Virus record (IMG/VR): IMGVR_UViG_3300049793_000366
Coordinates: 443,911 to 507,910 of that record
Length of the DNA: 64,000 bases
Strand: one strand, 5' to 3'
This document shows, in pieces, positions 1,493-35,663 of this stretch. Both the position numbers and the translations under genes were made by a program. A model generated the notes under the pieces. That model did no database searches. It was given only the letters and a program-made list of their open reading frames with translations, and was not told the DNA's origin. Each line of letters begins with the position of its first letter. The stretch's first letter is position 1.

Positions 1493-1508
1493 AATTAAAC
1501 TGCCACAC
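1493..1508 (+). repeat. Isolated copy of the 16-bp GCCACAC repeat
   Basis: AATTAAACTGCCACAC just upstream of the serine recombinase. Confidence 0.7.
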
Positions 1509-1529
1509 CATTATTCGATATAATCAACT

Positions 1530-2374: not shown

Positions 2375-2376
2375 TA

Positions 2377-2408
2377 TTTGCAAATCCGCATTTTAATCCG
2401 TACATTTG
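2377..2408 (+). promoter_or_regulatory. Bacteroidota sigma-A-type early promoter
   Basis: TTTG-N20-TACATTTG, ATG at 2413. Confidence 0.8.
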
Positions 2409-2412
2409 TAGA

Positions 2413-24103: not shown

Positions 24104-24115
24104 AACAATTACACT

Positions 24116-24334: not shown

Positions 24335-24587
24335 AATGAGTTAAAATGTATATGCTAAATTTGACTGTTTTCGCAGATTTACATGACGTTTATGTGAAGC
24401 CTGTTTGCGGGAACTATTATAATGCCACACTTGTACCACCTTAGTTGTCAGTCTATGTCTAACCTTGTCAGCCAGTCAGAACCCGTCAGATTGTTCATAA
24501 CTTCTATTTTATCCACAATTTATGGACATAAGGTTGTTGATAACTTTCTATCAGTCTGACGGTAATCTTTTATTAAATTTAAACAAT

Positions 24588-24803
24588 ATGGAAACACCAA
24601 TCACTGATAAACAAATAGTTGAGTATTTAAAATACTTGAAGACCGAATTCACTGAACTATGTAAAACTCCGGATAGGAGTATAAAAGAAATGTCTTACCG
24701 TAGTGTATTACTTGAGATGTTTCAGATTGAGACTAACAATGAGAAACACTTCGATGTACTTAGTAAAACACTAAATGACTATCGTATATCAAAGCGTAAT
24801 TAA
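24588..24803 (+). CDS. Hypothetical protein
   Basis: METPITDKQ; stop codon lies inside a 16-bp repeat. Confidence 0.6.
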   Translation: METPITDKQIVEYLKYLKTEFTELCKTPDRSIKEMSYRSVLLEMFQIETNNEKHFDVLSKTLNDYRISKRN

Positions 24804-24880
24804 AATGCCACACCTCAAAGCCTTATTCGGTGAGCATTCAAATTATAATGCCACAGTCTGACGGAGTTAAAGTGCCACAC

Positions 24881-24899
24881 TGCTCGTCTCCGACTCGCA
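24881..24899 (-). other. GNA-triloop DNA hairpin with tandem GA mismatches
   Basis: Minus strand TGC-GA-GTC-GGA-GAC-GA-GCA, between two 16-bp repeats. Confidence 0.55.
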
Positions 24900-24932
24900 T
24901 TAAACTACCACACCTTTCGGACATATAATGGT

Positions 24933-25160
24933 ATGTTTCAATCTATGAATGAGTTAGAGGTAAAGGCTGACGGTATGTTATGCTACAATGGTGTAAAGCT
25001 TCTTAGTGTTGAGGCTTTGAGTGACTTTGTATCTCTAACTGGGTTTGAACCTTTACAGGCTTTACAGACGTACTATATAACCACTCAAACACATCAGAGG
25101 AATCAAAAGCTTGAGATTCTATTTGATGGAGTTAAAGTGCCACACCTCAAACCGTTATAG
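24933..25160 (+). CDS. C-tag hypothetical protein
   Basis: QRNQKLEILF. Confidence 0.65.
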   Translation: MFQSMNELEVKADGMLCYNGVKLLSVEALSDFVSLTGFEPLQALQTYYITTQTHQRNQKLEILFDGVKVPHLKPL

Positions 25161-25191
25161 GGAGAATAAGTTAGAAGTCTTGTTGAATTAA
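25126..25191 (+). CDS. Tag-only mini-ORF or gene remnant (21 aa)
   Basis: MELKCHTSNRYRENKLEVLLN; 22 nt identical to 27102-27123. Confidence 0.35.
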   Translation: MELKCHTSNRYRENKLEVLLN

Positions 25192-25246
25192 AATGCCACA
25201 CCTCAACGCCTTATCTGGTAAGGATTAGAATTAAAATGCCACACTT

Positions 25247-25471
25247 ATGTTTAATATAGGAGATAGAGTTAAAGAATTGGGTAGGGATTGTTATAGGGAT
25301 GAGCCTATTGAGATAATATCTACGCTCAAGGAGAATAAGCGATATCATTTAAAGTATTTGAATGTATTTAATGTACAGGGTACTAATATGTTATTCTGGG
25401 TTCATGAAGATGATATTATCTTAGACAAGGAGTATTATAGGGATAAGAAGATTAATGAGGTGTTGAATTAA
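25247..25471 (+). CDS. C-tag protein (SH3-like start) flanked by 16-bp repeats
   Basis: MFNIGDRVK; YRDKKINEVLN. Confidence 0.75.
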   Translation: MFNIGDRVKELGRDCYRDEPIEIISTLKENKRYHLKYLNVFNVQGTNMLFWVHEDDIILDKEYYRDKKINEVLN

Positions 25472-25482
25472 AATGCCACACT

Positions 25483-25902
25483 TTATCTTTCTCTATCAAC
25501 TTCCATTTTCATAATAGCCAGACATTCTTGAACATCTGCTACGATTTCATCAGCAGTAGCTTTGGTTGACTGCATGGTTTTCATAGACATTTCAATCATT
25601 CTGATGGAGCTTTGTAGGCTTTTAATAAGTCTAATCTCTTCTTCTCTTGCTATATCGAGACCTTGTTGTATACCTAACTGTACTGCACACGCCATAACCG
25701 ATTCTACGTGGCTTCTGCCCTGTTCTTTTCTGCTGTACTCTAAGTTGCGTTTATTGAGTTGTACATCGATGTTTTGGCTTGTGGCGAGTAATTTACTGGA
25801 TGTGAGCATAACACCGTCATATGCTTCGAACTTTTTATTAACGATGATTGCGTTATAGGCTTTCATAATGCCTTTCATAATATCGGGAAATGTATTTTTC
25901 AT
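25483..25902 (-). CDS. Hypothetical protein
   Basis: MKNTFPD; helical; AVQLGIQQG. Confidence 0.7.
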   Translation of the reverse strand: MKNTFPDIMKGIMKAYNAIIVNKKFEAYDGVMLTSSKLLATSQNIDVQLNKRNLEYSRKEQGRSHVESVMACAVQLGIQQGLDIAREEEIRLIKSLQSSIRMIEMSMKTMQSTKATADEIVADVQECLAIMKMEVDRER

Positions 25903-25913
25903 GTCTTGTTGTA

Positions 25914-26120
25914 TTAGAATATTGATGGGAATATTAGGTCTAAAGCACCTGCGAGATATAATAGTATCATTATAAGAAGAGATATGCCAATTTTCCAATT
26001 TCGCTCTCTTTTAAACATTTCTTTTGCTTCATCTGAATACTGTTCCATGAAGTTCAAGGAACTAAATATAACATATACTGTGAATATAAATAAGATGAGT
26101 ATTTGTATAAATAATTTCAT
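25914..26120 (-). CDS. Small two-TM membrane protein
   Basis: Two hydrophobic helices; downstream of promoter. Confidence 0.7.
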   Translation of the reverse strand: MKLFIQILILFIFTVYVIFSSLNFMEQYSDEAKEMFKRERNWKIGISLLIMILLYLAGALDLIFPSIF

Positions 26121-26163
26121 ATTATGATTAATTTATTAGTTGATATCTTTAGTGTATGGTTTG

Positions 26164-26195
26164 TAAATATACGGATAATATTCCGGATCTCCAAA
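26164..26195 (-). promoter_or_regulatory. Early promoter with dyad
   Basis: TTTGGAGATCCGGAATATTATCCGTATATTTA on -. Confidence 0.8.
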
Positions 26196-26233
26196 TGAAA
26201 ACAACTTAGATAGGGTTGTATCGTATAATTAAA

Positions 26234-26491
26234 ATGCCACACCAACCATATCATATGTTATTACCGAAGGTTCGAAATGTATCACCGAGTACATTGGGTC
26301 AGAATATACAGATTATTAACACTGCGTATATGATACCAATGCGAAAGTGTTGTGATTGTGGTAATGTGATTAATATAATAGATGATGAGTTTGAGACAAA
26401 GCCTCGTATGTTTTTGTGGGTTAAGTTGGAGACTGATTATAGGTGTTGTGTATGTATGCGTGATAATAAGATTCGTAAGATATTTAAGTGA
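26234..26491 (+). CDS. Zn-finger protein with C-tag
   Basis: CCDCG...FLW...CCVC-MRDNKIRKIF; paralogue of 42464; ATG within repeat. Confidence 0.7.
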   Translation: MPHQPYHMLLPKVRNVSPSTLGQNIQIINTAYMIPMRKCCDCGNVINIIDDEFETKPRMFLWVKLETDYRCCVCMRDNKIRKIFK

Positions 26492-26715
26492 TGTCTGGAC
26501 TTACTTGTATATGTAAAGCTGACCATGCTTATCGGTTTATCAAGGGTAGGACTTATACTTATATGATAATTAATGGGCGGTTTAGTGTTTTAAATAGGGA
26601 TGCTAAGACTTGGTATAACTTTCACGATGATAACTTCCATGATGATTCGGTTAATTTTCACTTATTTTTTGAGTCTATACGTGATTATAATCTAAATGAA
26701 TTACTGAGCGAATAG
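26488..26715 (+). CDS. CIK-family protein with C-tag
   Basis: TCICK; IRDYNLNELL. Confidence 0.7.
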   Translation: MMSGLTCICKADHAYRFIKGRTYTYMIINGRFSVLNRDAKTWYNFHDDNFHDDSVNFHLFFESIRDYNLNELLSE

Positions 26716-26716
26716 A

Positions 26717-26748
26717 TTTGGTAATACCGGACTTTATCAATATATTTG
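26717..26748 (+). promoter_or_regulatory. Early promoter
   Basis: TTTG-N20-TATATTTG, ATG at 26753. Confidence 0.75.
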
Positions 26749-26752
26749 AAAT

Positions 26753-26878
26753 ATGAAAGCATTCTTAAGAATAATCACTTTTTATAGAGTAAATGATGTA
26801 GACTACGTACCTAATGGGTGCTTAGGATTAATATTCTGGCTTATAGTGATAGGTATAGTATTAGCAATCGCGAATTAA
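26753..26878 (+). CDS. Small membrane peptide (41 aa, not in ORF track)
   Basis: MKAFLRIITF...GCLGLIFWLIVIGIVLAIAN; own promoter. Confidence 0.6.
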   Translation: MKAFLRIITFYRVNDVDYVPNGCLGLIFWLIVIGIVLAIAN

Positions 26879-26879
26879 A

Positions 26880-27137
26880 ATGCCACACCACTTCAAATGT
26901 ATATGTAAGAATGAGTATCTACAATCCGGTAGGGAAGATACTTTAGTTATCTTCATACTCAATGAGATATATCTGGTGGAGAATACCGCGAGTGGGAACT
27001 ACTTATTAACTGGTAATATCCGTAGTGGTGATAATATTTTGCGTGAAATAGTATCTTTAGATGATGTAGGCTTTAAACGCTATATGATGCACATAGACGA
27101 GTATAGGGAGAATAAGTTAGAAGCATTGCTTAATTAG
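26880..27137 (+). CDS. CIK-family protein with C-tag
   Basis: KCICK; YRENKLEALLN; ATG supplied by repeat. Confidence 0.75.
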   Translation: MPHHFKCICKNEYLQSGREDTLVIFILNEIYLVENTASGNYLLTGNIRSGDNILREIVSLDDVGFKRYMMHIDEYRENKLEALLN

Positions 27138-27657
27138 CTAATGCTTCGTCTAATTTCATATCCCTAATCTGAGATTTTACTTCTGATACTTTAGCTTTAA
27201 AGGTGAAACCCAGTTCATCATTTCGTAATTGAATGCTTTTCTCAACATCTTTAGACCATTTATCTCTCATTGTAGCATTGTACACGTTTACCAATAACCC
27301 GGTTTTAATTGAGTTGGTAACTACCTGGTCTTTACACGTAACAACTACTACGAATTTTTCGTTTACTGTATTGCTGAGTGCATTGAGTAGTTTATTAAAC
27401 CTGGTTACTGTTAAACCACTATGCGAACCAACTTCAAGATACTCATAATTATCACCAGACATAGCATCTTCTAATAGTTCTTTAATCTCTCTGATGTTGT
27501 ATTCAGAACCTTTGACAACATTTATCTTACCCTTTTTGAATTTGAAGAAGTTACTCTCAAGTGTATCGTTATGTAACTCAAGTGCTAATTTGGAAACGAG
27601 TACCCAATCAGGTGACTGTTTTACTATTTCTGCTTTTATTTTATCTGTGTTATTCAT
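27130..27657 (-). CDS. C-tag hypothetical protein
   Basis: IRDMKLDEAL. Confidence 0.75.
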   Translation of the reverse strand: MNNTDKIKAEIVKQSPDWVLVSKLALELHNDTLESNFFKFKKGKINVVKGSEYNIREIKELLEDAMSGDNYEYLEVGSHSGLTVTRFNKLLNALSNTVNEKFVVVVTCKDQVVTNSIKTGLLVNVYNATMRDKWSKDVEKSIQLRNDELGFTFKAKVSEVKSQIRDMKLDEALAN

Positions 27658-28067
27658 CTACTATCTAACTGTTTTAATGCGGCATCGCGTTTAATCTGCT
27701 TAATGAAGTCTTCGTCCATTTCTTTGGGTTGAATTGGATAGCCATTCTCTGCGTAGAAGTCACTGTGCCATTCGTGTGCGATACCGTATGTGCTTACAAG
27801 CTTTCTATATTCTCTTGGCTTTAGGTTGAGTGTAACTAATCGAACCAATTCATCAATGGTTAGTGGTACGCTTATATCTTGTGACATATAGGTTACTGCT
27901 GGATTACCAGAGAGAATGCTTTTTGTATCGGTTGGCTTTAGGTAGAATAGTTCACCTTGAAATGTAGCCATGAGTAATGAATTAGGGTCGAACTGGTGTT
28001 GACCATCAGCATCTATGATAAGTATCTTAAGGAAACCTAATGGTGTTGTAAGTCTATTCTTTTTCAT
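27654..28067 (-). CDS. C-tag hypothetical protein
   Basis: KRDAALKQL. Confidence 0.7.
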   Translation of the reverse strand: MKKNRLTTPLGFLKILIIDADGQHQFDPNSLLMATFQGELFYLKPTDTKSILSGNPAVTYMSQDISVPLTIDELVRLVTLNLKPREYRKLVSTYGIAHEWHSDFYAENGYPIQPKEMDEDFIKQIKRDAALKQLDSR

Positions 28068-28083
28068 TAGCTGTATTTTGCCC

Positions 28084-28115
28084 TAAATATACGGATAATA
28101 ATCCGGATTACCTAA
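28084..28115 (-). promoter_or_regulatory. Early promoter with dyad
   Basis: TTAGGTAATCCGGATTATTATCCGTATATTTA on -. Confidence 0.75.
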
Positions 28116-28439
28116 TTATACTAAAAATCCACTAAAATATTGACTGAACTCTACGGTTCTAAAGAAGTGTTTACGTTGATATTCGGCACAACCAACAGAT
28201 CCGGTAGAGAAGCTATCATCACTTGACCATATAATGATTCCTGTCTCTCTGGTTGACATTTGAGGTACCCAGTCGATATACAAGACATCTTCACCCAAGA
28301 ACTTCTGTATATGCTTATATTCCTGTTCATTTCTAACGACAACGGATAGTCCATTGTAGCTTAGAACTTCTTCGATGGTGTTATCTCGCTTATCTGAATT
28401 TGGTTCAGTATTAACTATTCCTTTTCTTGTGGTTGCCAT
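28116..28439 (-). CDS. Hypothetical protein
   Basis: 107 aa. Confidence 0.65.
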   Translation of the reverse strand: MATTRKGIVNTEPNSDKRDNTIEEVLSYNGLSVVVRNEQEYKHIQKFLGEDVLYIDWVPQMSTRETGIIIWSSDDSFSTGSVGCAEYQRKHFFRTVEFSQYFSGFLV

Positions 28440-28484
28440 AATTCTCTGATATTAAATATAAGCAATAAGTTTAATATATACTAC

Positions 28485-28949
28485 ATGAAACATATTAAAC
28501 TATTCGAGGCTTTTTCTGATGATTTAAGTAATATACATCTTGACCTTAGACGTGCCGAGCAAAAGCTTAAGACTGAATACCGCGATAAAGAGAAACAATT
28601 GGGTGATAAGTATAAGAGTGCTGTTGAAGCTTGTATTCAAGACTTATTAGAAGATTATGATGCTAAGTTCATTTATGATATGTTTCCACACACTGGTCAG
28701 AAGATTGGCTTCGAAGTTAGTGTATTCTTTGATAAACCTACTGGGAGTCAATTAGAAACTCTATTACCAATCATAGCAAGGACTGATAAGAAGCTTACAG
28801 CAGAAGGTTTTATAGTTTCTTATGTATGTGAACATAATCTTGGTAACTTCTCCAATGATGATTATTCTAAAGATTTAGCTGAATTATCAAAGAATTTCAT
28901 ACATTACTCTGGTTGTGTTTCATTAAAGGTTAGTATGAGAATCAACTAA
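28485..28949 (+). CDS. N-tag protein, DDY/KKL family
   Basis: MKHIKLFEAF; TAATATATA at 28472-28480. Confidence 0.8.
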   Translation: MKHIKLFEAFSDDLSNIHLDLRRAEQKLKTEYRDKEKQLGDKYKSAVEACIQDLLEDYDAKFIYDMFPHTGQKIGFEVSVFFDKPTGSQLETLLPIIARTDKKLTAEGFIVSYVCEHNLGNFSNDDYSKDLAELSKNFIHYSGCVSLKVSMRIN

Positions 28950-28954
28950 TCCTA

Positions 28955-28986
28955 TTTGGTTATATCGAATATAATCCGTATATTCG
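28955..28986 (+). promoter_or_regulatory. Early promoter
   Basis: TTTG-N20-TATATTCG, ATG at 28991. Confidence 0.7.
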
Positions 28987-28990
28987 GACT

Positions 28991-29182
28991 ATGGAAACCT
29001 CAATTGTTAGAATCAATTTAATGACTGATAAAGATTACAGACCATATTGTGGTGCTGATTCTTGTGTATATACTATGCCACGTTCAAAGTGGAATGGTAG
29101 TCAATTCGAATGTAAATGTGGGTGGGTATCTGAATTCCCTGCTGATTTCATTACTCGTTATAAAGAAAAACACAATCTTTAA
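28991..29182 (+). CDS. Small Cys-rich (Zn-binding?) protein
   Basis: PYCG..C...FECKCGW. Confidence 0.7.
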   Translation: METSIVRINLMTDKDYRPYCGADSCVYTMPRSKWNGSQFECKCGWVSEFPADFITRYKEKHNL

Positions 29183-29517
29183 TGGGTAGAAAAGTTAAAA
29201 TAAAGAAAGAAGATATTATACTTGAAGCATTAATTGAATGGTTCGATGATGATTTCAAGACCAGTAGAGCAGAAGCCAAGAAGAATCCTACTGAGGTTAC
29301 CAACCCACATTTTTGGGAGAAACCACAATTCGTATCACTTAATTACATTGACCAGTATAATAATATCTGTATCACAGAGACTCAAGCTGGTGTAGACCCA
29401 TCAGAACCAAATTATACAATAGGAGTAGCTGTTCCATATGTTTGGTATAAGCCCTATCACGATAAGTATATGAAGATGCGTAACCGCATTGAGAGTATAG
29501 ATTCTTTAGTCAAATAG
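29182..29517 (+). CDS. C-tag hypothetical protein
   Basis: NRIESIDSLV. Confidence 0.7.
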   Translation: MGRKVKIKKEDIILEALIEWFDDDFKTSRAEAKKNPTEVTNPHFWEKPQFVSLNYIDQYNNICITETQAGVDPSEPNYTIGVAVPYVWYKPYHDKYMKMRNRIESIDSLVK

Positions 29518-29518
29518 A

Positions 29519-29911
29519 CTATTTATTAGACTTTTCAGCATTACAAACCGTACACATTGGTTGATAGTTATCGATGTGGTCGGGACCGCCTTTATCTCTT
29601 GCTATGATATGGTCTTTAGTCATAAGCACCTCTTCACCCTTTGAATTCACTGCGTATAGGTTGAGGTGATAAGCCAATGAAGCTTTATTATACTTATCGC
29701 GTTCTTTAGCGAAGTATTTACCCTTAGCACCACAGATAACACAATCAATTCCTTTTACTTTGAAGGTTTTATACCTATCAGAACCCAGCTTGATATCATC
29801 ACCATCTAAGACTATGATATCTCTTTTGGTATGATGCAGTTCAACAGATGATAGAATGAGTTGAATTGGATATGTTTCTTTACGATAGTATCTCTTTACT
29901 TCAGTTTCCAT
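29519..29911 (-). CDS. HNH endonuclease
   Basis: CVICG...TKDHIIARDKGGPDHIDNYQPMCTVCNAEK. Confidence 0.85.
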   Translation of the reverse strand: METEVKRYYRKETYPIQLILSSVELHHTKRDIIVLDGDDIKLGSDRYKTFKVKGIDCVICGAKGKYFAKERDKYNKASLAYHLNLYAVNSKGEEVLMTKDHIIARDKGGPDHIDNYQPMCTVCNAEKSNK

Positions 29912-29961
29912 TAATACAAATATAGCGAATTATTATGACATTTAATATATACTCTAAACAA

Positions 29962-30690
29962 ATGAGTAAGATGGACACACGATATAAGTTAAAAGAGGTG
30001 GGGAGATTTATTAAAGCACTCAGCAATGACTATAAGAATACGGTTGATACTGATATAAAAGCTAAGAAGAAGAAAGCTATATGGAAAACAGTATGCTTGA
30101 CATTCGACCAGATTTGGAGTGGGATATCAGCATTGTTTGTTTATCCTATTTGGTATGCTTTCAGAAAGCAAATAACTAATACCTTATATGAAGGTACTAC
30201 CTGGGAAGCCGTTCATCAATTGGTGGTTGATAATAAGATTGATGAGGTGAAGTATATTGTCAAACGAAAGGGTGCTTTATTGTATTGGTTATGGACTTTT
30301 GGTGACTTGAGAGATCCATTAGGTAGAGGTGAGTTACCGGAAGATGGGTATAAAGGTAGGTATAAGAATAACTTCGTAGGGAGATATTATGAGAATGCTT
30401 TGCGTAATCCAAGGTTTACTATTAACTATATGAATTATCGAACTGGTACCATAGTAGAATCGCATACGGTGATTGATACCAGAGATTATAATATATCGTA
30501 TTCATCAGAGGGTATTGGTAAGAATCCTGCGGGTGTATTATTCAAATGGGTGGTTGATGATAAGAATAAGTGGTATTATGTCTATGATGATAATAACAAG
30601 GAGAACTTATTTTACTTTGGGTATTCTGGTTTGGGTAAAACTGATATTGGTAAGAATGGTAGGTTTGAGATTAGTTACAGAAAAAATTGA
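29962..30690 (+). CDS. Hypothetical (possibly membrane-anchored) protein
   Basis: Hydrophobic segment IWSGISALFVYPIWY; TAATATATA upstream. Confidence 0.75.
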   Translation: MSKMDTRYKLKEVGRFIKALSNDYKNTVDTDIKAKKKKAIWKTVCLTFDQIWSGISALFVYPIWYAFRKQITNTLYEGTTWEAVHQLVVDNKIDEVKYIVKRKGALLYWLWTFGDLRDPLGRGELPEDGYKGRYKNNFVGRYYENALRNPRFTINYMNYRTGTIVESHTVIDTRDYNISYSSEGIGKNPAGVLFKWVVDDKNKWYYVYDDNNKENLFYFGYSGLGKTDIGKNGRFEISYRKN

Positions 30691-30700
30691 TATATAACAC

Positions 30701-31114
30701 ATGAAACATCTTAGACACTTTAATGAGCATTTGAATAATGAGCTTCAAGAAATAGCTGAGTTCTTTTACTATGCATTTGAAGACCATAACTATTATGAGT
30801 TCAAACCACTCAACAAAGGATATACTGATACTGTTTATTATAATGGTGTTGTTGAGGTGAGAGATATGTCTTCTGGTCAGTATGAGGTTTATATGAATCT
30901 TGGTATACCTGAGCCATATAGTGGTCCTTCTTTATTCGGTGGATCATCTACTATGAAATACAGTAATGATGCTGAGTTAAATAAGTTAAATGTTGAGGTT
31001 AAGAAGATAGCGAGAAAGCTTGGTTTCAGTGAGAAGTCTCATGTGGATTACATATGTAGTTACTTAGATGAGACTGATAATATGATAAAAGCGTCAATTG
31101 TTATTTATAAATAA
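30701..31114 (+). CDS. N-tag hypothetical protein
   Basis: MKHLRHFNE; GATATATA 4 nt upstream. Confidence 0.75.
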   Translation: MKHLRHFNEHLNNELQEIAEFFYYAFEDHNYYEFKPLNKGYTDTVYYNGVVEVRDMSSGQYEVYMNLGIPEPYSGPSLFGGSSTMKYSNDAELNKLNVEVKKIARKLGFSEKSHVDYICSYLDETDNMIKASIVIYK

Positions 31115-31125
31115 ATATATAGAGC

Positions 31126-31524
31126 ATGAAATATTTACAAACATTCAATGAAAGAAAATTCTACACTATCAAATATGATAATCAGGAATTAAGTATCGAT
31201 GATATTAACAATGGTGAATGGTCTTTAACTGACCATTTAAACCCTAAGATTGATAAGCTTATCATGGCATTAGGTGATATGAAAGCGCGAGTTAATACAC
31301 ACGGTAGCAAAGTCTATAAAGACGAAGCAAAGAAGATAGATTTGATGAGTCAGATATTAGATTCTGATGTTGCTGAGTCTGCTCCAATTGAAGCAACTGA
31401 GACTACAGTTGATATTAATATCGCTTTAGTTGATGAGGTTGAACCGATTGAAGATGTGTCAGTAGAAGTTGATAATACACCAATGAATATAGGTGGTGCT
31501 ATTGATAGGCTTATGTCAACCTAA
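31126..31524 (+). CDS. N-tag hypothetical protein
   Basis: MKYLQTFNE; AAATATATA 4 nt upstream; acidic tail. Confidence 0.75.
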   Translation: MKYLQTFNERKFYTIKYDNQELSIDDINNGEWSLTDHLNPKIDKLIMALGDMKARVNTHGSKVYKDEAKKIDLMSQILDSDVAESAPIEATETTVDINIALVDEVEPIEDVSVEVDNTPMNIGGAIDRLMST

Positions 31525-31796
31525 TCGGTTATCTTATCTATTTGTTTAGCCCTGTATTTGATTTTCTGTTCATCATACCACTTATCGGATGGGTTGTTAT
31601 ACCATACTTTATATAATTCAATTGGGTTTATCCAAGATTCTATTCTATTGACAACGCCATTGAATTCTAATTTTGCTGAGGTGTTATTCTCTCTACAATA
31701 AACCACCACTACCTCAACGCACTCACATAGTTCGCTACCTGGTATGACTGAGGCATAATATCCTTCTTGAATCTTAAATAAGTTATTTAGTTCCAT
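31521..31796 (-). CDS. C-tag hypothetical protein
   Basis: YRAKQIDKI. Confidence 0.7.
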   Translation of the reverse strand: MELNNLFKIQEGYYASVIPGSELCECVEVVVVYCRENNTSAKLEFNGVVNRIESWINPIELYKVWYNNPSDKWYDEQKIKYRAKQIDKITD

Positions 31797-31798
31797 TG

Positions 31799-32239
31799 TT
31801 AGTATCTTGTATTATATAATCCGATATCAATTGTTATTTCTAAGCATTCTATTTGATTATCCAACATATAGAATGGTTTATCTTTTTTATAAAGGAATGA
31901 GAAGAATCCTTTCTTTTGTACTGGTTTATGATTCACCTCAGCCATAAAAGAATACAAATCCGAACGCATACTACCACGGGTAATACCTGGGCTGGTTATA
32001 ATCAATATAGATACATCCTTCTTTACATCCCAACCATCAGCCATTAACTTCCTATTGAATCTATTCAGACTCTTTACTAAGTCTTTATCCAGTAGTTGGT
32101 CTTTGTATTCAGCTTTCAATCGGATATCTCTCTTACTATTGATTAGACACATAGAGTAACTTTCCATTAGCTCGAAGCCAGCGGATTCTACTTCTTTGAG
32201 TAGGTTCAGTATGAGTTGTTTCTTATAGCTCTTTAACAT
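31799..32239 (-). CDS. Untagged KKL..G-family protein
   Basis: LNRFNRKLMADG. Confidence 0.7.
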   Translation of the reverse strand: MLKSYKKQLILNLLKEVESAGFELMESYSMCLINSKRDIRLKAEYKDQLLDKDLVKSLNRFNRKLMADGWDVKKDVSILIITSPGITRGSMRSDLYSFMAEVNHKPVQKKGFFSFLYKKDKPFYMLDNQIECLEITIDIGLYNTRY

Positions 32240-32673
32240 TAGTGTATTCTTATATGACCGTGATAATCACCAGCACCATCCCAGAGTGATAATTCAAACC
32301 ACACCTTGTGTCCTTCGCTTTCAATCTTCTTTAGTAATGATTTGGTATGTAGTAACATTTCTTGTTTAGCTCTGAGTACTACCAGTTTAGCTTCCATCTT
32401 TGATTCCCATTCGAATAGAGAAGGACCGCCGGTATCTGGTGTTGGCTTTCTTACGATGAAGTATATGTTCGCTAAATGGATTAGATTCTTGATTCGTTCT
32501 TCTTTGGTGATTGAGAATGGTGACTTACCTTTACAATACCAATGGTCAACGATTGGGTTATATCCTATACTAAGGTCTTTGAATCCTTCATGTAGGCTCA
32601 TAGCATCTTCGAATGATTCTACGATGAGGTTAATGGTTGATTCGAAATCCTTCTGTATTTGTGTGTAGTCCAT
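32239..32673 (-). CDS. Untagged KKL..G-family protein
   Basis: MDYTQIQ; LLKKIESEG; promoter upstream. Confidence 0.7.
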   Translation of the reverse strand: MDYTQIQKDFESTINLIVESFEDAMSLHEGFKDLSIGYNPIVDHWYCKGKSPFSITKEERIKNLIHLANIYFIVRKPTPDTGGPSLFEWESKMEAKLVVLRAKQEMLLHTKSLLKKIESEGHKVWFELSLWDGAGDYHGHIRIH

Positions 32674-32679
32674 TGGGCA

Positions 32680-32710
32680 TAAATATACGGATAATATTCC
32701 GATAACCAAA
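32680..32710 (-). promoter_or_regulatory. Early promoter with dyad
   Basis: TTTGGTTATCGGAATATTATCCGTATATTTA on -. Confidence 0.75.
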
Positions 32711-32713
32711 CAG

Positions 32714-33193
32714 TTAAAGTGAACATAGTTCATCCAACTCACTGAACTGATGATAACGAATGTCTTCTTTTTTAAATATAACAGCCATGAGTTCTATATC
32801 CGTTTCTATACCATCAGTAATATAACGGTGAAGATAACCAGCATCTACCACATCTTTTATATAGTAGAAGTTCTTAATACCACATGGTAATGTCTCACAA
32901 TCCTGTAAGCTTGGACAAACAACCGCTTCTTGATAGAACCTGGCGAATAGCTTATAACCCATCTTCTCAAGCTTCTTATTAGCTCTCAGTATCTTATTGA
33001 CCATAGATGTTGTTATAGTGATGTATCTACGGTCTCCGCTTGGACTTGTGTCCTTTACGTGGTACCAATAGTAATTACTATATTCATCACAGTATTCGGT
33101 GGTATATAACTCATATTCATAATCATCACATAATTCGAACATGATATCATTAACCTTTGGTACGTCAATAGTATAGATTGACTCTTTTATCAT
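32714..33193 (-). CDS. Untagged DDY/KKL-family protein
   Basis: FELCDDYEY...ILRANKKLEKMG. Confidence 0.7.
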   Translation of the reverse strand: MIKESIYTIDVPKVNDIMFELCDDYEYELYTTEYCDEYSNYYWYHVKDTSPSGDRRYITITTSMVNKILRANKKLEKMGYKLFARFYQEAVVCPSLQDCETLPCGIKNFYYIKDVVDAGYLHRYITDGIETDIELMAVIFKKEDIRYHQFSELDELCSL

Positions 33194-33868
33194 TTAAACG
33201 GTTTCTAATTCGAACTGACAGACCTTTACTTTAAGGTCATTGTATTGATAGATTTTATTCTTCTTCTCAAGGCTTTTGATGTATTCGATATACTCAGGTC
33301 TTGCTGGTTCATTCTTGTTGAGGTACATATGTTCAATATGTTCTAACTCAGAAAACGATGTTATCTCTGTATCACCGTAACCTATACCACCGCTACCTCT
33401 GGGTCCGAAGATAGTACTTGGGATAACAGTTGATTCAATCTCATAGGAAGAGTTTAATGTCTCCTTATTGAAATGATAGTCTTGATAGTCTGAATGATTT
33501 ATATTGCGACCAATGTGCCATCTGAATCTTCCGATAGCTTTCTTCTTCTCGATGGGTTCTTTATGACCAGCCCAGTTATCAATATAGGTAATATGGTCAA
33601 CACCTTCTAACCTTGCGATAGCGATTTCACGCTGTACTTGCTTATCATCGAATCCCCAGCCGCTTACCTTTAGTTTATTGGTAAAGTTTTCGAATTCAAC
33701 CTTTAACTTCATACCATAGACGAATTCAATCAATAGCTCTGCTTCATTACAGTTGATTGGTCTCTGGACATTAAGACTACGTGTATAGCCTTTAGTTAAC
33801 AAAGACATATAGAAGTCTTTATGGATGCCCAGCTTGGTCTTAGCTCCTTTATAACAATTATTTTTCAT
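33194..33868 (-). CDS. Hypothetical protein
   Basis: 224 aa. Confidence 0.75.
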   Translation of the reverse strand: MKNNCYKGAKTKLGIHKDFYMSLLTKGYTRSLNVQRPINCNEAELLIEFVYGMKLKVEFENFTNKLKVSGWGFDDKQVQREIAIARLEGVDHITYIDNWAGHKEPIEKKKAIGRFRWHIGRNINHSDYQDYHFNKETLNSSYEIESTVIPSTIFGPRGSGGIGYGDTEITSFSELEHIEHMYLNKNEPARPEYIEYIKSLEKKNKIYQYNDLKVKVCQFELETV

Positions 33869-34121
33869 CAGCTTCGGTAATTAATAGTGATAGGTTTATA
33901 ATCGTTTTATCCTTATTCTTAAAGAACTTCTCTTTGTTATACTCTTTGAACTTCAATGTACTATTCTTCGATGTGTATAACTTATCGTCTAACTTCTTCG
34001 ATATCCTATCAATCTCTCTTAATAGTTTATCAGTGAGTACAGTATGCTTAATAGCACACCCATAAGTTCCAACTGGAACGAACCCAAAGTCTTCAATCAG
34101 TGTTAAGAATATATCATTCAT
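33858..34121 (-). CDS. Untagged DDY/KKL-family protein
   Basis: FLTLIEDFGF...IDRISKKL. Confidence 0.7.
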   Translation of the reverse strand: MNDIFLTLIEDFGFVPVGTYGCAIKHTVLTDKLLREIDRISKKLDDKLYTSKNSTLKFKEYNKEKFFKNKDKTIINLSLLITEADEK

Positions 34122-34130
34122 ATTGTCCAG

Positions 34131-34162
34131 TAAATATACGGATAATAATCGATACTACCAAA
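34131..34162 (-). promoter_or_regulatory. Early promoter
   Basis: TTTG-N20-TATATTTA with TATCCG. Confidence 0.75.
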
Positions 34163-34336
34163 TTTATGACCATTAATCATGGATATTAATGGATTCTTAT
34201 ATAAAATATAAGATAAGTTGGAGTCTACTCGGTCTCAGACGCTTGGTTCTGTTACAGTCAATCTTATTCTTATTTTTTTAACTTACTGAGTTACAGGTCT
34301 TTAGCAGGTTGGGGATTCAGTTCCTCCCTGATGACA
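34163..34336 (-). ncRNA. Candidate promoter-driven structured ncRNA
   Basis: Downstream of promoter 34340-34371, no credible ORF, several stems. Confidence 0.4.
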
Positions 34337-34339
34337 ATA

Positions 34340-34371
34340 CAAATATAAGGAATAAATTCTAAACCACCAAA
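34340..34371 (-). promoter_or_regulatory. Early promoter
   Basis: TTTG-N20-TATATTTG on -. Confidence 0.7.
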
Positions 34372-34427
34372 TATATCCGCATATTTTGGACAATAAACTT
34401 CGATTACCCTCTGGTATATAAGTATTT

Positions 34428-34724
34428 ATGAACATAAGAGAGAAATTCGCATTATATAAACAACTATACAGTGAGATACTGGATGAGTTTGGAATGGATG
34501 GCTGGGAACAAATAGATAACAAGCTTGAGGCTAAGTGGAGACATAACGAGAAACACAATGATATGTTATTCTACGAAGGTGATTGTGAGTATGGTATTGA
34601 TGATGCCAGACTAATCAAAGAAGTCGATGGGTTAGTACTATTCTATTGTAGAGACAATGGTGATAAGTTCTACTCTCTATTTGATACCGCTAATAAACTG
34701 GGTGAAGAGGATGAAGATGAGTAA
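34428..34724 (+). CDS. Hypothetical protein
   Basis: 98 aa, acidic. Confidence 0.7.
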   Translation: MNIREKFALYKQLYSEILDEFGMDGWEQIDNKLEAKWRHNEKHNDMLFYEGDCEYGIDDARLIKEVDGLVLFYCRDNGDKFYSLFDTANKLGEEDEDE

Positions 34725-34947
34725 TACTTATATCTGTGTAAAAGAGTGGAGTCTTGCTTCTATACCATATAGAAAGGGTGATAGGGTACATACTGCTGAT
34801 ATATCATCAAAGATATCACCAAGTAAATTCATTAGCTTAACTAATGGTGCTATATTCCGCACACGTACATTTTTAGAACACTTTAAACATATCGATGATT
34901 ACATTCGTGATATTGATAAGAATATAGACCTTGTGTTAAATGATTAA
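34717..34947 (+). CDS. CIK-family protein, degenerate C-tag
   Basis: YICVKE; FLEHFK; DKNIDLVL. Confidence 0.65.
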   Translation: MSNTYICVKEWSLASIPYRKGDRVHTADISSKISPSKFISLTNGAIFRTRTFLEHFKHIDDYIRDIDKNIDLVLND

Positions 34948-35206
34948 CGGTCTACCAATAAAAACCTGCGTATGTATTAAGAACTACGCTAAACGAAACG
35001 ATACCTATCGCTATACCATCGGTGAGGTCTATAAGTATCAAGTAGTCAGTCATTATATAAGCCCTGATGTATGGCGTGTCTATACCACTGATGCAGACTA
35101 TGACTTCTATGAAGTATCAAAGGATCCATGCGAACCAAAGATAATTGAGTACTTTCAAGATATACAAACGAATAGGGATTCTAAACTTAAGAAGCTATTG
35201 AAATGA
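34940..35206 (+). CDS. CIK-family protein with C-tag
   Basis: CVCIK; NRDSKLKKLL. Confidence 0.75.
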   Translation: MINGLPIKTCVCIKNYAKRNDTYRYTIGEVYKYQVVSHYISPDVWRVYTTDADYDFYEVSKDPCEPKIIEYFQDIQTNRDSKLKKLLK

Positions 35207-35589
35207 CAGCACCCGAACTAATAGAGTATTTAGAGCGATTGGGATTCATTATGGATTCTTATACCAGTATGATGGAGTTCATCACCCTACATCTACGCGA
35301 TAAAGATATTGGTGCTAATGTGAATAACCTAAGTGGTGTATCAATAAGTATCTGTAAGAGTAAAGGAGTCTATCATCAACAGTATAGTGATAAGCCAAAC
35401 ATATTCAGTATTAAGTATGAGCTAACGGATCATATAGACTTCAATACGAAGATGCCCGTTAGAAGCCATCAGATGAATCACTATACAATAGATGGTGTGT
35501 TGGAGTTCCTCGTAGAGAATCGAATTGGTAAACCGGATGTATTAAGAGAAGCTATCATTGAATTAAACTGCCACAGGCTCTTGAATTAA
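35203..35589 (+). CDS. Hypothetical protein
   Basis: 3' end formed by 16-bp repeats. Confidence 0.7.
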   Translation: MTAPELIEYLERLGFIMDSYTSMMEFITLHLRDKDIGANVNNLSGVSISICKSKGVYHQQYSDKPNIFSIKYELTDHIDFNTKMPVRSHQMNHYTIDGVLEFLVENRIGKPDVLREAIIELNCHRLLN

Positions 35590-35663
35590 AATGCCACACC
35601 AACTAATTAAACTACCACATCCGAAACCCTTACTGGATAAGACTTAGAATTATAATGCCACAC
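35561..35663 (+). repeat. Cluster 2 of 16-bp GCCACAC direct repeats (4 copies)
   Basis: 35561, 35584, 35605, 35648; last pair 43 bp apart with CTTA-N5-TAAG spacer. Confidence 0.85.

What the first reader, a model, noticed from the sequence alone, without database searches (positions are those of the whole stretch)
24415..35663. 16-bp AATTAAAATGCCACAC repeats: helically phased, with a recurring 43-bp doublet, sitting on gene boundaries
Seen: 16 copies, all on + (one at 1493, 11 at 24415-26888, 4 at 35561-35663). Close neighbours are 21, 23, 24, 33, 43, 43, 43 and 56 bp apart, roughly multiples of a helical turn. Three doublets (24798/24841, 25186/25229, 35605/35648) have the same 43-bp period and a CTTA-N5-T(A/G)AG inverted repeat in the spacer. 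The repeat contains TAA-A-ATG: it supplies the stop codon of ORFs ending at 24803, 25191, 25471, 26878, 35589 and the start of ORFs at 26234 and 26880. Inference: binding sites for an initiator or partition protein, or recombination sites that bound single-gene cassettes.
Basis: partly seen in the sequence, partly recalled or inferred. Interest (0 to 1): 0.72.

Follow-up and report, generated by a model that had tools for sequence, protein, structure and literature searches.

The report
Recombinase-linked repeat box bounding phage gene cassettes
A 16-17 bp DNA box that sits in front of a small serine-recombinase gene in a group of huge soil and sediment phages has multiplied here into same-strand, helically phased arrays. 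These arrays punctuate a stretch of tiny unknown genes and mark where such genes are gained, lost or swapped between related phages.

Summary
There are 16 copies of (G/T)AATTAAAATGCCACAC, all on the + strand. They occur only at window 1493, 24415-26888 and 35561-35663 of a 508-kb huge-phage record (chance expectation 0.06).

New findings:
1. The copy at 1493 is the one invariant element upstream of the small serine-recombinase gene (1530-2105). It is present in every orthologue fetched (59-82% identity, different neighbours) and is always followed 8-10 nt later by TATAA(T/A/C).
2. Dense same-strand arrays of the box exist in many other metagenomic phage contigs. One contig carries recombinase, box and array within 3 kb.
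3. Related arrays differ by whole cassettes whose ends fall at boxes.
4. Close spacings cluster at about 23, 33, 43-44 and 52 bp, a period of 10.8-11 bp.
5. The box differs from the phage's Bacteroidota-type promoters.
6. The CTTA-N5-TAAG hairpin is not conserved, and the "ParB-like" gene has no ParB domain.

Best reading (about 0.4): the box is a DNA-binding site of the recombinase-family HTH protein. It would be autoregulatory at its own gene and form phased operator or accessory arrays at cassette junctions, which also act as recombination breakpoints.

Rivals: true crossover sites (integron-like, about 0.2), a phage-specific promoter core (about 0.2), an RNA-level junction signal, iterons. 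No binding, transcript or recombination data were available.

The parts
1493..1508 (+). Box copy (C variant, AATTAAACTGCCACAC), 21 nt upstream of the recombinase ATG
   Evidence: Conserved in all recombinase orthologues while the flanks diverge.
1519..1524 (+). TATAAT box 10 nt after the box copy and 5 nt before the ATG
   Evidence: TATAA(T/A/C) lies 8-10 nt after CCACAC in all seven orthologous loci, while its distance to the ATG varies from 4 nt to 21 nt or more.
1530..2105 (+). Small serine-recombinase-family gene (191 aa, catalytic domain plus C-terminal HTH)
   Evidence: PF00239 at 1e-14 plus HTH_23/HTH_7; PHROG 'DNA invertase'. The AlphaFold model matches full-length gamma-delta, Tn3 and Sin resolvases. 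It is the only PF00239 gene in the record.
24415..24430 (+). Box copy (2 mismatches), first of the main array
   Evidence: An orthologous copy is present in relA.
24588..24803 (+). Cassette gene (71 aa, ORFan); its stop is the TAA of the box at 24798
   Evidence: The gene is absent from the orthologous array relA, and homology resumes at the box.
24798..24813 (+). Box copy, perfect
24841..24856 (+). Box copy (2 mismatches), 43 bp after the previous one
24865..24880 (+). Box copy (2 mismatches)
24898..24913 (+). Box copy (3 mismatches, CATTAAACTACCACAC), followed 10 nt later by TATAAT (24924-24929)
   Evidence: The same box-N10-TATAA(T/A) layout as at the recombinase; kept in relA, although the downstream gene differs.
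24933..25160 (+). Cassette gene (75 aa) that reads through the box at 25130
   Evidence: In relA it is replaced by four unrelated cassettes.
25130..25145 (+). Box copy (2 mismatches), inside the 3' end of the preceding ORF
25156..25191 (+). Remnant of a cassette 3' end (codes Y-R-E-N-K-L-E-V-L-L-N-stop)
   Evidence: Read. The tail family is described.
25186..25201 (+). Box copy, perfect
25229..25244 (+). Box copy, perfect, 43 bp after the previous one; the ATG of the next gene follows after 2 nt
25247..25471 (+). Cassette gene (74 aa); its stop is the TAA of the box at 25466
   Evidence: Its orthologue in relA shares 82% nt identity.
25466..25481 (+). Box copy, perfect, at a convergent junction with no + gene downstream
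25483..26120 (-). Two minus-strand genes lying inside the array, driven by a host-type promoter at about 26160-26196 (-)
26227..26242 (+). Box copy, perfect, at the head of a four-gene + operon; its ATG (26234) opens the first ORF
   Evidence: No host-type + promoter lies in this 113-bp divergent spacer.
26234..26878 (+). Three small + genes between two boxes (26234-26491, 26488-26715, 26753-26878)
   Evidence: A paralogue of the first lies at 42464-42664.
26873..26888 (+). Box copy, perfect; its TAA stops ORF 26753-26878 and its ATG starts ORF 26880-27137
   Evidence: The homologue in the 709-kb relative has no box.
26880..27137 (+). Cassette gene (85 aa) that starts at the box ATG
35203..35589 (+). 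Gene (128 aa) that reads through the box at 35561 (E-L-N-C-H) and stops at the TAA of the box at 35584
   Evidence: The same read-through pattern is seen in 23-bp doublets of other arrays.
35561..35576 (+). Box copy (2 mismatches)
35584..35599 (+). Box copy, perfect
35605..35620 (+). Box copy (3 mismatches)
35648..35663 (+). Box copy (1 mismatch), last of a 4-copy gene-free cluster facing convergent minus-strand genes

Best explanation
The 16-17 bp box (G/T)AATTAAA(A/C)TGCCACAC is a cis-acting protein-recognition site in double-stranded DNA. It belongs to the small serine-recombinase-family gene at 1530-2105.

Inferred mechanism:
1. The protein binds the box through its C-terminal helix-turn-helix.
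2. At its own gene, a single box lies 8-10 nt upstream of a TATAAT element. Binding there overlaps the upstream part of the promoter and autoregulates the gene, as resolvases such as TnpR do at res.
3. In this phage lineage and several others the box has been multiplied into same-strand arrays. Copies sit 2, 3, 4 or 5 helical turns apart, so bound proteins lie on one face of the DNA and can bind cooperatively, head to tail. Sin dimers bind the direct-repeat regulatory site II in this way.
4. The arrays sit at the junctions of very small accessory genes. The box's TAA often ends one gene, and its ATG, or an ATG 0-3 nt later, begins the next.
5. Because the boxes are repeated, they are also the places where whole cassettes are gained, lost, duplicated or replaced between related phages. 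This could happen by recombination between boxes, catalysed by the recombinase or by general recombination.

Shown here: the anatomy, the confinement to three loci, the conservation upstream of the recombinase gene, the existence of arrays elsewhere, the cassette differences bounded by boxes, and the phasing.

Inferred, not shown: who binds the box, and what binding does.
For: 1. Linkage to the recombinase gene. Box plus TATAA(T/A/C) at a fixed 8-10 nt is the only conserved island upstream of the recombinase gene in seven lineages (window, L155, L156, L162, L164, L166, L182). These share 59-82% aa identity and have different neighbours. The distance from TATAAT to the ATG varies from 4 nt to 21 nt or more.

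2. One copy per locus in relatives. The orthologous loci carry exactly one copy each, including 50 kb of the 709-kb relative. The recombinase is therefore the only gene consistently associated with the box.

3. Co-occurrence with arrays. L182 carries recombinase, box and an array on one strand within 3 kb. In the window they lie 23 kb apart.

4. Conserved DNA-binding helix. The recognition helix region (TGKSTTTVQKVK) is nearly invariant among the orthologues, while the rest of the protein varies.

5. Fold and precedent. The fold is that of a full-length small serine recombinase with a C-terminal HTH. A serine recombinase binding direct-repeat half-sites in a catalytically inactive regulatory complex is known for Sin site II (PDB 2r0q; PMC2428073).

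6. Spacing. Close spacings peak at 17-24, 32-34, 41-45 and 49-52 bp, with none at 25-28, 35-40 or 46-48 bp. The best period is 10.8-11.0 bp.

7. Clusters independent of gene junctions. Gene-free clusters of 4-9 copies occur. Examples: one antisense to both flanking genes (L175), one flanking a host-type promoter (L183), and last copies 19-44 nt upstream of a host-type -7 box (L172, L174/L188, L175).

8. Not a general promoter class. The box is unlike the phage's own Bacteroidota-type promoters and is absent from the other 444 kb of the record.

9. Cassette turnover at boxes. This is seen in window versus relA, and in variants V1/V2/V3 of the Ga03152xx contigs.
Against: - No binding data exist. 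The protein-DNA complex prediction was not run by the tool.
- The box is not palindromic, whereas small serine recombinases normally bind inverted half-sites as dimers.
- A more distant relative (P0009) has the same recognition helix but keeps only the 5' half of the box upstream of its gene. P0010 has no box.
- Many copies overlap stop and start codons, and some are translated (E-L-K/N-C-H, or M-P-H-L...). Part of the conservation could therefore be coding or RNA-level.
- The fixed box-TATAAT spacing is equally what a sigma-type promoter would show.
- One 1.35-kb indel starts at a box but ends at none.
- The single source run, available as contigs only, shows no rearranged joints at boxes.
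Confidence: 0.4

Rival explanations
1. The boxes are true crossover sites of the serine recombinase. The protein excises, inserts and reshuffles box-bounded mini-gene cassettes. This would be an integron-like cassette system run by a small serine recombinase, with the box beside the recombinase gene playing the part of the primary site.
For: - A box sits next to the recombinase gene in all orthologues. Recombinase and array share one contig.
- All boxes are in direct orientation.
- Related arrays differ by insertion of 'X + box' units at one and the same junction. The F5|F6 junction holds nothing, the F11 gene plus a doublet, or a 27-bp spacer plus a box.
- Unrelated cargo genes share box-encoded ends: a stop in the TAA and a start at or just after the ATG. 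This is what a site overlapping cassette ends would give.
- Arg8 and Ser10 are conserved.
- Arrays sit on short, fragmented contigs with co-occurring variants.
Against: - There is no inverted-repeat dimer site or identifiable central dinucleotide. Copies only 17-24 bp apart are too close to be separate crossover sites.
- The catalytic DRLxR motif is replaced by SKLSC(R/K) in the whole subfamily, and Ser10 is Thr in the next relative.
- Small serine recombinases acting on direct sites delete; insertion is not their known reaction.
- Some breakpoints lie outside boxes: the left end of the 24588 cassette, and the 1.35-kb indel in L192.
- Variants differ by 2.5-8% in shared parts, so the events are old.
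- No alternative joints were seen in the source run.
Confidence: 0.2
2. The box is the core of a phage-specific promoter class, recognised by a phage sigma factor, an activator or a modified RNA polymerase. It would drive the recombinase operon and the mini-genes. Doublets would be tandem promoters, and repetition would cause shuffling, as with the PeSL cassettes of T4-type phages. The recombinase would have no part in it.
For: - The box-N(8-10)-TATAAT spacing is fixed while the distance to the ATG varies. About 10 array copies also have TATA(T)AAT at 8-11 nt.
- Boxes head + operons that lack a host-type promoter (1493; 26227).
- The box contains a TAnnnT hexamer (TAAAAT, TATAAT, TAAACT, TAAAGT). 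It lies 7-10 nt before the ATG of many cassettes, the same geometry as the phage's near-leaderless host-type promoters.
- All copies are co-oriented with the adjacent + genes in the window.
- The phage encodes a sigma-70-family protein.
Against: - The box is confined to 3 loci in 508 kb and to one copy in 50 kb of a relative.
- Most copies lack a -10 element at the fixed distance.
- In 11 of 81 copies the box's own ATG is the first ATG of the ORF. At 26880 it is the only possible start, so the transcript must begin upstream of it.
- Clusters face convergent genes (25466, 35561-35663) or lie antisense to both neighbours (L175).
- Helical phasing is not needed for tandem promoters.
- No terminator hairpins were found.
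Confidence: 0.2
3. The box is an RNA-level intercistronic signal (UAA-A-AUG-CCACAC). It would be a termination-reinitiation or translational-operator site, or a processing site, in polycistronic mRNAs of the mini-gene arrays.
For: - The stop codon lies in the box in 15 of 81 copies, and the start lies at the box ATG in 11.
- In several cassettes a four-codon M-P-H-L mini-ORF ends in an ATGA overlap with the next gene.
- The phage uses no Shine-Dalgarno sequences and has very short leaders.
Against: - The conserved recombinase-upstream copies have CTG, not ATG, and lie 20-37 nt from the start codon.
- Gene-free clusters occur, and the L175 cluster is antisense to local genes.
- Spacing in helical turns points to DNA, not RNA.
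- There is no Rfam match and no conserved structure.
Confidence: 0.08
4. The boxes are iterons or a centromere: binding sites of a replication initiator or partition protein of the huge phage.
For: - The repeats are direct, 16-17 bp long, in clusters of 4-9, with 22-23-bp and 43-44-bp spacing. This resembles plasmid iterons.
- One copy lies in the promoter of a DNA-binding protein gene.
- The arrays lie near the broad maximum of cumulative GC skew of the record.
Against:
- Arrays are interleaved with, and overlap, coding ends.
- Array content is hypervariable between close relatives, which is unexpected for an origin or centromere.
- The 709-kb relative has none in the syntenic 50 kb.
Confidence: 0.07
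5. The boxes have no function of their own. They are the best-preserved piece of the junction of tandemly duplicated paralogous mini-genes.
For: - In the Ga03152xx arrays the cassettes are paralogues (MKQYI.../MKEYV..., about 115 aa). They share a C-terminal tail whose last codons (L-N-stop) are part of the box.
- The tail is common in the genome.
Against: - The box is conserved upstream of the recombinase gene, where no such paralogue precedes it.
- Most of the 23 tail-bearing ORFs found across the genome are not followed by the box.
- Gene-free clusters and perfect 16-mers next to unrelated cargo need selection or active spread.
Confidence: 0.05

Closest known systems
PeSL mobile regulatory cassettes of T4-type phages (Arbiol et al. 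2010, PMC2839356; Comeau et al. 2014, PMC4122927)
   Same: Both are short conserved non-coding repeats that flank ORFan genes in hyperplastic regions of large myoviruses. Both are co-oriented with the genes. In both, insertions, deletions and replacements between close relatives end at the repeats.
   Different: PeSLs are a strong host sigma-70-type early promoter plus a terminator stem-loop. Here the box is 16-17 bp, is unlike the phage's host-type promoter, has no conserved hairpin and no terminators, forms phased gene-free clusters, and is tied to a serine-recombinase gene.
Resolvase res sites and their regulatory subsites (Tn3/gamma-delta res with TnpR autoregulation; Sin resH site II, PMC2428073, PDB 2r0q)
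   Same: The site lies directly upstream of a small serine-recombinase gene. The clusters span about 100-120 bp and hold several binding motifs. Half-sites are in direct repeat, as in Sin site II, where the bound dimer is catalytically inactive and regulatory. The role of resolvase as repressor of its own gene is established knowledge for Tn3.
   Different: Only one box lies at the recombinase gene, not a multi-subsite res. No palindromic crossover site was found. There are dozens of boxes in arrays kilobases away, interleaved with genes. The catalytic DRLxR motif is altered. Binding is untested.
Integron cassette arrays (attI/attC with IntI)
   Same: A recombinase gene has a proximal site, and there is an array of co-oriented, mostly single-gene cassettes. 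Each cassette is bounded by the same short site, which overlaps the cassette ends. Cassette content varies between relatives.
   Different: Integrons use a tyrosine recombinase and folded single-stranded attC hairpins. Here the candidate enzyme is a serine recombinase, the sites are 16-17 bp and non-palindromic, the array is not adjacent to the recombinase gene, and no excision or insertion was shown.
Plasmid and phage iterons (for example P1 incC/incA, RK2 oriV 17-mers; from general knowledge)
   Same: Both are 16-19-bp direct repeats in clusters, spaced by whole helical turns (22-23 bp commonest), with a copy in the promoter of a DNA-binding protein gene.
   Different: No initiator-family gene is present. 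The repeats overlap coding ends, and the arrays are hypervariable between relatives.

Membership tests
PeSL-type mobile regulatory cassette | Contains a strong host sigma-type early promoter | tested here: not met
   The phage's host-type promoters are TTTG-N19-TAnnTTTG, and the box does not match this. Only about 10 of 88 copies have a TATAAT-like element at a fixed distance.
PeSL-type mobile regulatory cassette | Contains a stem-loop terminator | tested here: not met
   No terminator-like sites were found in 24000-27800. The spacer inverted repeat is not conserved in relA or in other arrays.
PeSL-type mobile regulatory cassette | Flanks ORFans in hyperplastic regions; indels between relatives end at the repeats | tested here: met
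   Window versus relA, and variants V1/V2/V3 of the Ga03152xx contigs. The cassette proteins have no Pfam or PHROG family.
PeSL-type mobile regulatory cassette | Recombination between repeats yields mini-circles | not testable with these tools
   Only assembled contigs of one DNA run were available.
Small serine recombinase (resolvase/invertase), for the gene at 1530-2105 | N-terminal catalytic domain fold, E-helix and C-terminal HTH | tested here: met
   PF00239 at 1e-14 plus HTH families. The AlphaFold model (pLDDT 74) matches full-length gamma-delta, Tn3 and Sin resolvases at E 1e-6 to 1e-7.
Small serine recombinase (resolvase/invertase), for the gene at 1530-2105 | Catalytic residues: Arg8, Ser10 and the D67-R68-x-x-R71 motif | tested here: inconclusive
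   R8 and S10 are invariant in 8 orthologues. The DRLxR position reads S-(K/R)-L-S-C-(R/K). The next relative, P0009, has Thr at the Ser10 position.
Resolvase res / invertase crossover site | Site adjacent to the recombinase gene | tested here: met
   The box lies 20-37 nt upstream of the ATG in all orthologues of >=59% identity.
Resolvase res / invertase crossover site | Imperfect inverted repeat of about 26-30 bp that binds a dimer around a central dinucleotide | tested here: not met
   The box is non-palindromic, and no inverted partner exists in the window or the record. A single 28-bp palindromic version was seen, in L172 only.
Resolvase res / invertase crossover site | Bound and recombined by the cognate recombinase | not testable with these tools
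   The complex prediction was not folded. No reads show joints at boxes.
Integron | Tyrosine recombinase IntI with attI, and attC sites that fold as hairpins | tested here: not met
   The only recombinase found is of the serine family. The boxes have no hairpin potential of their own.
Iteron origin / ParB-parS centromere | Neighbouring Rep initiator or ParB-family gene | tested here: not met
   ORF 2335-3135, the cassette ORFs and the flanking ORFs have no Pfam or PHROG hit to Rep or ParB.
Iteron origin / ParB-parS centromere | Direct repeats of 16-22 bp spaced by whole helical turns | tested here: met
   The period is 10.8-11.0 bp over 48 distinct pairs.
Phage temporal-class promoter | Many copies upstream of co-oriented genes across the genome, with transcription start at a fixed distance | tested here: inconclusive
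   All copies are co-oriented, but they are confined to three loci. Some face convergent genes or lie antisense. No transcript data were available.

The most novel reading that the evidence does not exclude
A cassette system of huge Bacteroidota phages in which a small serine recombinase uses a 16-17 bp non-palindromic box as its site. The box would double as the stop/start junction of mini-genes, and the recombinase would excise, capture and reshuffle single-gene cassettes. This would be an integron analogue built on serine-recombinase chemistry.
Probability: 0.17. Interest if true: 0.9.

Novelty: new variant of a known kind. Interest (0 to 1): 0.62.

Why it matters
- A testable protein-site pair. 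The work defines a concrete cis element and a candidate trans factor shared by a group of very large (0.5-0.7 Mb) uncultured phages of Bacteroidota from soils and sediments. Almost nothing is known about gene regulation or genome plasticity in such phages.
- A guide to accessory genes. The arrays flag where these phages turn over small accessory genes, which are likely host-takeover or counter-defence candidates. They also explain why such regions assemble into short, variant contigs.
- Possible new roles for a serine recombinase. If the recombinase-family protein binds the boxes, this would be a serine recombinase, or a derivative with an altered active site, used as a regulator of a gene array. 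If it recombines them, it would be a new kind of cassette system and a possible tool.
- A cheap decisive test. The fixed box-TATAAT module upstream of the recombinase gene is easy to test experimentally.

Tried and rejected
- **Exact 16-mer in IMG/VR.** It gave 21 single chance hits and no arrays.
- **First doublet pattern in IMG/VR.** It was too loose and returned more than 118 chance hits.
- **Composite box-TATAA pattern in IMG/VR and in GTDB genomes.** Only chance hits without a recombinase were found.
- **A protein from inside the array (25483-25905) in IMG/VR.** No relatives were found.
- **Phage GenBank search of 24000-27500.** One irrelevant 105-bp hit.
- **Relatives search.** I walked 50 kb of it by gene look-ups instead.
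- **Read laying.** Only one DNA run was available, as contigs. The listed 'joints' are matches of another repeat (the host-type promoter) or have 20-nt sides, so they are not rearrangements at boxes.
- **Complex prediction of recombinase x2 with box DNA.** It was not folded, so it counts neither for nor against binding.
- **Sigma-54 reading of the reverse strand (TGGCAT-N5-TT).** Rejected: the -12 GC is absent and variable, and the direction opposes the genes.
- **Reading the box as a Bacteroidota -7 element.** Rejected, because the consensus is different.
- **CRISPR-like array.** Rejected on repeat length, composition and spacer sizes of 0-700 bp.
- **Known RNA family.** None found.
- **Tandem-repeat finder.** It sees nothing at the arrays.
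- **Spacer hairpin.** Not conserved.
- **Paralogy among window cassettes.** Only 26234 with 42464, and 24116 with 9013.

Full report
**What the window is.** The window is the last 64 kb of a 507,910-bp IMG/VR virus record (G000:C1:443911-507910). The record was labelled 'provirus', with a CheckV completeness of 97%. The recombinase protein encoded in the window is on record on a 711,805-bp contig, so the held record is probably a trimmed piece of an even larger phage genome. The only sequencing run that holds the DNA is a soil metagenome.

The record has 33% G+C, a myovirus-type tail sheath, many tRNA-like T-arm repeats and hundreds of very small ORFs. Its commonest regulatory repeat is a textbook Bacteroidota promoter: TTTG, 19 nt, then TAnnTTTG, in the extended form ATTTGG..ATCCGGAATATTATCCGTATATTTG. 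The ATG usually follows 5-9 nt later, so leaders are very short. About 20 strong copies lie in the window on both strands. The host is therefore very likely a member of Bacteroidota. This is an inference from promoter type and the lack of Shine-Dalgarno sequences.

**Check of the observation.** The 16-mer has 14 matches at <=2 mismatches, all on +, against 0.06 expected. Two more copies with 3 mismatches lie at 24898 and 35605. No further copy exists in the other 444 kb of the record.

An alignment of the 16 copies, and later of 88 non-redundant copies from all contigs, shows information only in (G/T)AATTAAA(A/C/G)TGCCACAC(C/T)T.

The motif's TAA ends the ORFs at 24803, 25471, 26878 and 35589. 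Its ATG opens the ORFs at 26234 and 26880. The '25191 ORF' is only a short remnant of a gene's 3' end. The spacer inverted repeat exists in the three window doublets, but it is not kept in the orthologous array or elsewhere.

**The copy at 1493 is tied to the recombinase gene.** ORF 1530-2105 is a 191-aa small serine recombinase with a C-terminal HTH (PF00239 at 1e-14; PHROG 'DNA invertase'). Its AlphaFold model matches full-length gamma-delta, Tn3 and Sin resolvases. It is the only such gene in the record.

I fetched the genomic context of its orthologues (59-82% identity). In all seven lineages the upstream region keeps (G/T)A(A/T)TTAAACTGCCAC(A/G)C, followed 8-10 nt later by TATAA(T/A/C). 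These lineages are the window, a 709-kb relative, and five smaller contigs with different neighbouring genes. The surrounding sequence is not alignable, and the distance from TATAAT to the ATG varies from 4 nt to 21 nt or more.

Each of these loci has exactly one copy. This includes 50 kb of the 709-kb relative that I walked by gene look-ups. That relative is collinear with window 0-11 kb but has no counterpart of window 24-36 kb.

Two more distant relatives weaken the picture slightly. P0009 has Thr in place of Ser10 and the same recognition helix, but keeps only the 5' half of the box before a TATAAA. P0010 has no box.

**Arrays exist in other phages.** One scan of the metagenome collection for a close pair of boxes returned 28 contigs. 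About 15 of them carry dense arrays, and the copies are co-oriented within each contig. Examples are 14 copies in 2.9 kb (L174), 11 in 1.7 kb (L190), and 9, 9, 8, 8 and 6 copies in others.

One contig, L182, carries a recombinase orthologue (60% identity) with its upstream box. Eight small genes follow on the same strand, and then the start of an array 2 kb downstream. Recombinase plus array therefore co-occur in two separate lineages.

**Boxes are where cassettes differ.** L179 and L170 overlap by 390 identical bases. Joined (relA), they form an 82-91% identical orthologue of window 24.4-25.5 kb. The join is mine and links contigs from two different assemblies.
- The window gene 24588-24803 is absent from relA, and homology resumes at the box.
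- Between the copies equivalent to 24898 and 25229 the window has one cassette, while relA has four unrelated ones.
- The box plus about 20 nt, including TATAA(T/A), is kept at 24898 although the downstream gene differs.

In a set of sediment contigs (Ga03152xx) three array variants share their flanks at 92-100% identity. They differ at one junction, F5|F6, which holds nothing (L174), a whole extra gene plus a doublet (L184, L182, L196), or a 27-bp spacer plus a box (L192). L174 also has an extra cassette elsewhere.

Not every breakpoint is at a box. The left end of the 24588 cassette lies at a different short repeat (CAGTCTGACGG). A 1.35-kb indel in L192/L180 starts right after the last box but ends at none.

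The variants differ by 2.5-8% in their shared parts, so these are evolutionary events rather than observed high-frequency switching. The contigs of the source run show no alternative joints at boxes.

**Relation to coding.** In the sediment arrays the cassettes are paralogues of about 115 aa. They begin 0-3 nt after CCACAC (MKQYI..., MKEYV...) or at the box's own ATG (MPHLK...), and they end in the box's TAA. In 23-bp doublets the first copy is read through as E-L-K/N-C-H and the stop is in the second copy. Window gene 35203-35589 does the same.

Over 81 non-redundant copies, the box TAA is the stop of an ORF of >=45 aa in 15. The box ATG is the first ATG of an ORF in 11. At 26880 the box ATG must be the real start, because the homologue in the relative aligns upstream of any other start.

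Many cassette proteins share a C-terminal tail, (Y/F)Rxx(K/R)(L/I)xx(L/I)(L/I). This tail occurs in 23 ORFs across the genome on both strands, and most of them are not followed by the box. The 5' part of the box (TTG AAT TAA) therefore overlaps conserved codons in some cassettes. Coding cannot explain three things: the recombinase-upstream copies (CTG instead of ATG, 20-37 nt from the start), the gene-free clusters, or the boxes beside unrelated cargo. None of the cassette proteins has a Pfam or PHROG family.

**Evidence for a DNA-level protein site.** Close neighbours over all contigs fall at 17-24 bp (23 commonest), 32-34, 41-45 (43/44 commonest), 49-52 and 56 bp. None falls at 25-28, 35-40 or 46-48 bp. 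For 48 distinct pairs the best period is 10.8-11.0 bp with phase near zero. Some of these pairs are homologous to each other. The value 23 = 3n-1 also suits the read-through arrangement, so the statistic is suggestive rather than a clean probability.

Gene-free clusters of 4-9 copies in 100-230 bp occur in several places:
- window 24798-24913, 25130-25244 and 35561-35663;
- L190;
- L183, where six copies flank a host-type -7 box;
- L175, where nine copies lie between two minus-strand genes and so are antisense to local transcription.

In three contigs the last copy of an array lies 19-44 nt upstream of a host-type -7 box. One contig (L172) has a partial inverted copy that makes a 28-bp palindrome.

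**What it most likely is.** The recombinase-family protein is the only gene consistently associated with the box. Its HTH recognition helix is nearly invariant among the orthologues. Serine recombinases are known to bind regulatory sites next to their own genes, and to bind head-to-tail direct repeats in a catalytically inactive complex (Sin site II: PDB 2r0q; PMC2428073).

I therefore favour, at about 0.4, the reading that the box is this protein's binding site. It would be autoregulatory at its own promoter (box at the -35/spacer position relative to TATAAT). In the arrays it would form phased multi-site platforms at cassette junctions, where it may regulate the mini-genes. Repetition of the box makes it the breakpoint of cassette turnover.

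The subfamily has SKLSC(R/K) where canonical enzymes have DRLxR. It is therefore open whether the protein still catalyses recombination.

**Rivals.** The main rivals are true crossover sites (an integron-like system, about 0.2) and a phage-specific promoter core that does not involve the recombinase (about 0.2). The fixed box-TATAAT spacing and the position at the heads of operons at 1493 and 26227 speak for the promoter reading. Against it are the confinement to three loci, the copies whose ATG is a start codon, the convergent or antisense clusters and the phasing. An RNA-level junction signal, iterons or a centromere, and a functionless duplication scar are less likely; the reasons are given in their entries.

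**Comparison with known systems.** In behaviour the arrays are closest to the PeSL regulatory cassettes of T4-type phages, which are repeats flanking ORFans in hyperplastic regions and which mediate modular shuffling (PMC2839356). They fail PeSL's defining features of a host-type promoter and a terminator hairpin.

In their link to a serine recombinase they resemble res or accessory sites, but they lack a palindromic crossover site. They resemble integron arrays in layout, but not in enzyme or site type. They resemble iterons in size and phasing, but have no initiator gene beside them.

I rate the finding a new variant of a known kind. I found no description of this box or of a recombinase-linked array of this sort, but my literature searches were limited to the comparison systems.

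**Limits.** There are no binding, transcript or recombination data. The complex prediction was not run by the tool. The full 711-kb and 709-kb contigs could not be scanned. Many array contigs are short, and their phage affiliation rests on the box and on overlaps. relA is an in-silico join.

Noticed in passing
window 26160-26196(-), 28084(-), 37454(-), 38323(-), 55114(-), 63603(+) and about 15 more; about 40 copies genome-wide: A highly conserved extended Bacteroidota-type promoter, ATTTGG..ATCCGGAATATTATCCGTATATTTG (TTTG-N19-TAnnTTTG). The ATG follows only 5-9 nt after the box, which implies near-leaderless mRNAs. These copies are the 32-36-nt repeats that read laying reported as 'joints'.
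   Followed up: partly
G000 genome-wide; in the window e.g. 9013-9279, 17002-17370, 20748-21017, 25247-25471, 26880-27137, 42464-42664, 57673-57969, 58144-58545: At least 23 small ORFs on both strands end in a shared C-terminal tail, (Y/F/V)R(D/E/N)x(K/R)(I/L)xx(I/L)(I/L). This is a large family, or a shared C-terminal module, of mini-proteins with no Pfam or PHROG match.
   Followed up: partly
whole record G000 and L155/L159-L161: The held 508-kb 'provirus' record appears to be a trim of a 711,805-bp contig. A collinear relative is a 709,085-bp contig filed inside a bacterial MAG assembly (GCA_040384045.1). Another relative is filed as 'Flavobacteriales bacterium'. These are huge phages mis-binned as bacteria.
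   Followed up: partly
The gene is conserved next to the recombinase only in the closest relatives (51% identity in the 709-kb phage), and the ParB label is unsupported.
   Followed up: yes
L172:938-1000 (metagenome contig OCZT010070376.1): Between two direct boxes a partial inverted copy creates a 28-bp near-palindrome (GTGTGGC-TTTTGAATTAAAA-TGCCACAC). This is the only dimer-site-like arrangement seen anywhere.
   Followed up: no
G000 about 450-507 kb (window about 6-64 kb): Cumulative GC skew rises steadily across 440 kb, then plateaus with its maximum at 480-490 kb, close to the arrays. Because the contig is truncated, the meaning (a switch in replication or in transcription polarity) is unclear.
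   Followed up: no
window 1-438 and upstream (L155:6864-8999): A ClpB-like double AAA+ protein of about 710 aa, a DUF1653 gene and a DUF6794 gene precede the recombinase in the closest relatives. In L162 the ClpB-like gene is split into two ORFs by a 506-aa ORF that lies between them.
   Followed up: no
G000:C1:112839-113045: A sigma-70-family gene (region 2 hit at 8e-18; 209-aa frame). Its promoter class was not identified, and the box does not occur near it.
   Followed up: no
window 24553-24563 and 24853-24864: An 11-nt repeat, CAGTCTGACGG, marks the left breakpoint of the 24588-24803 cassette and also follows the box at 24841. This suggests short-homology recombination in addition to box-to-box events.
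   Followed up: partly
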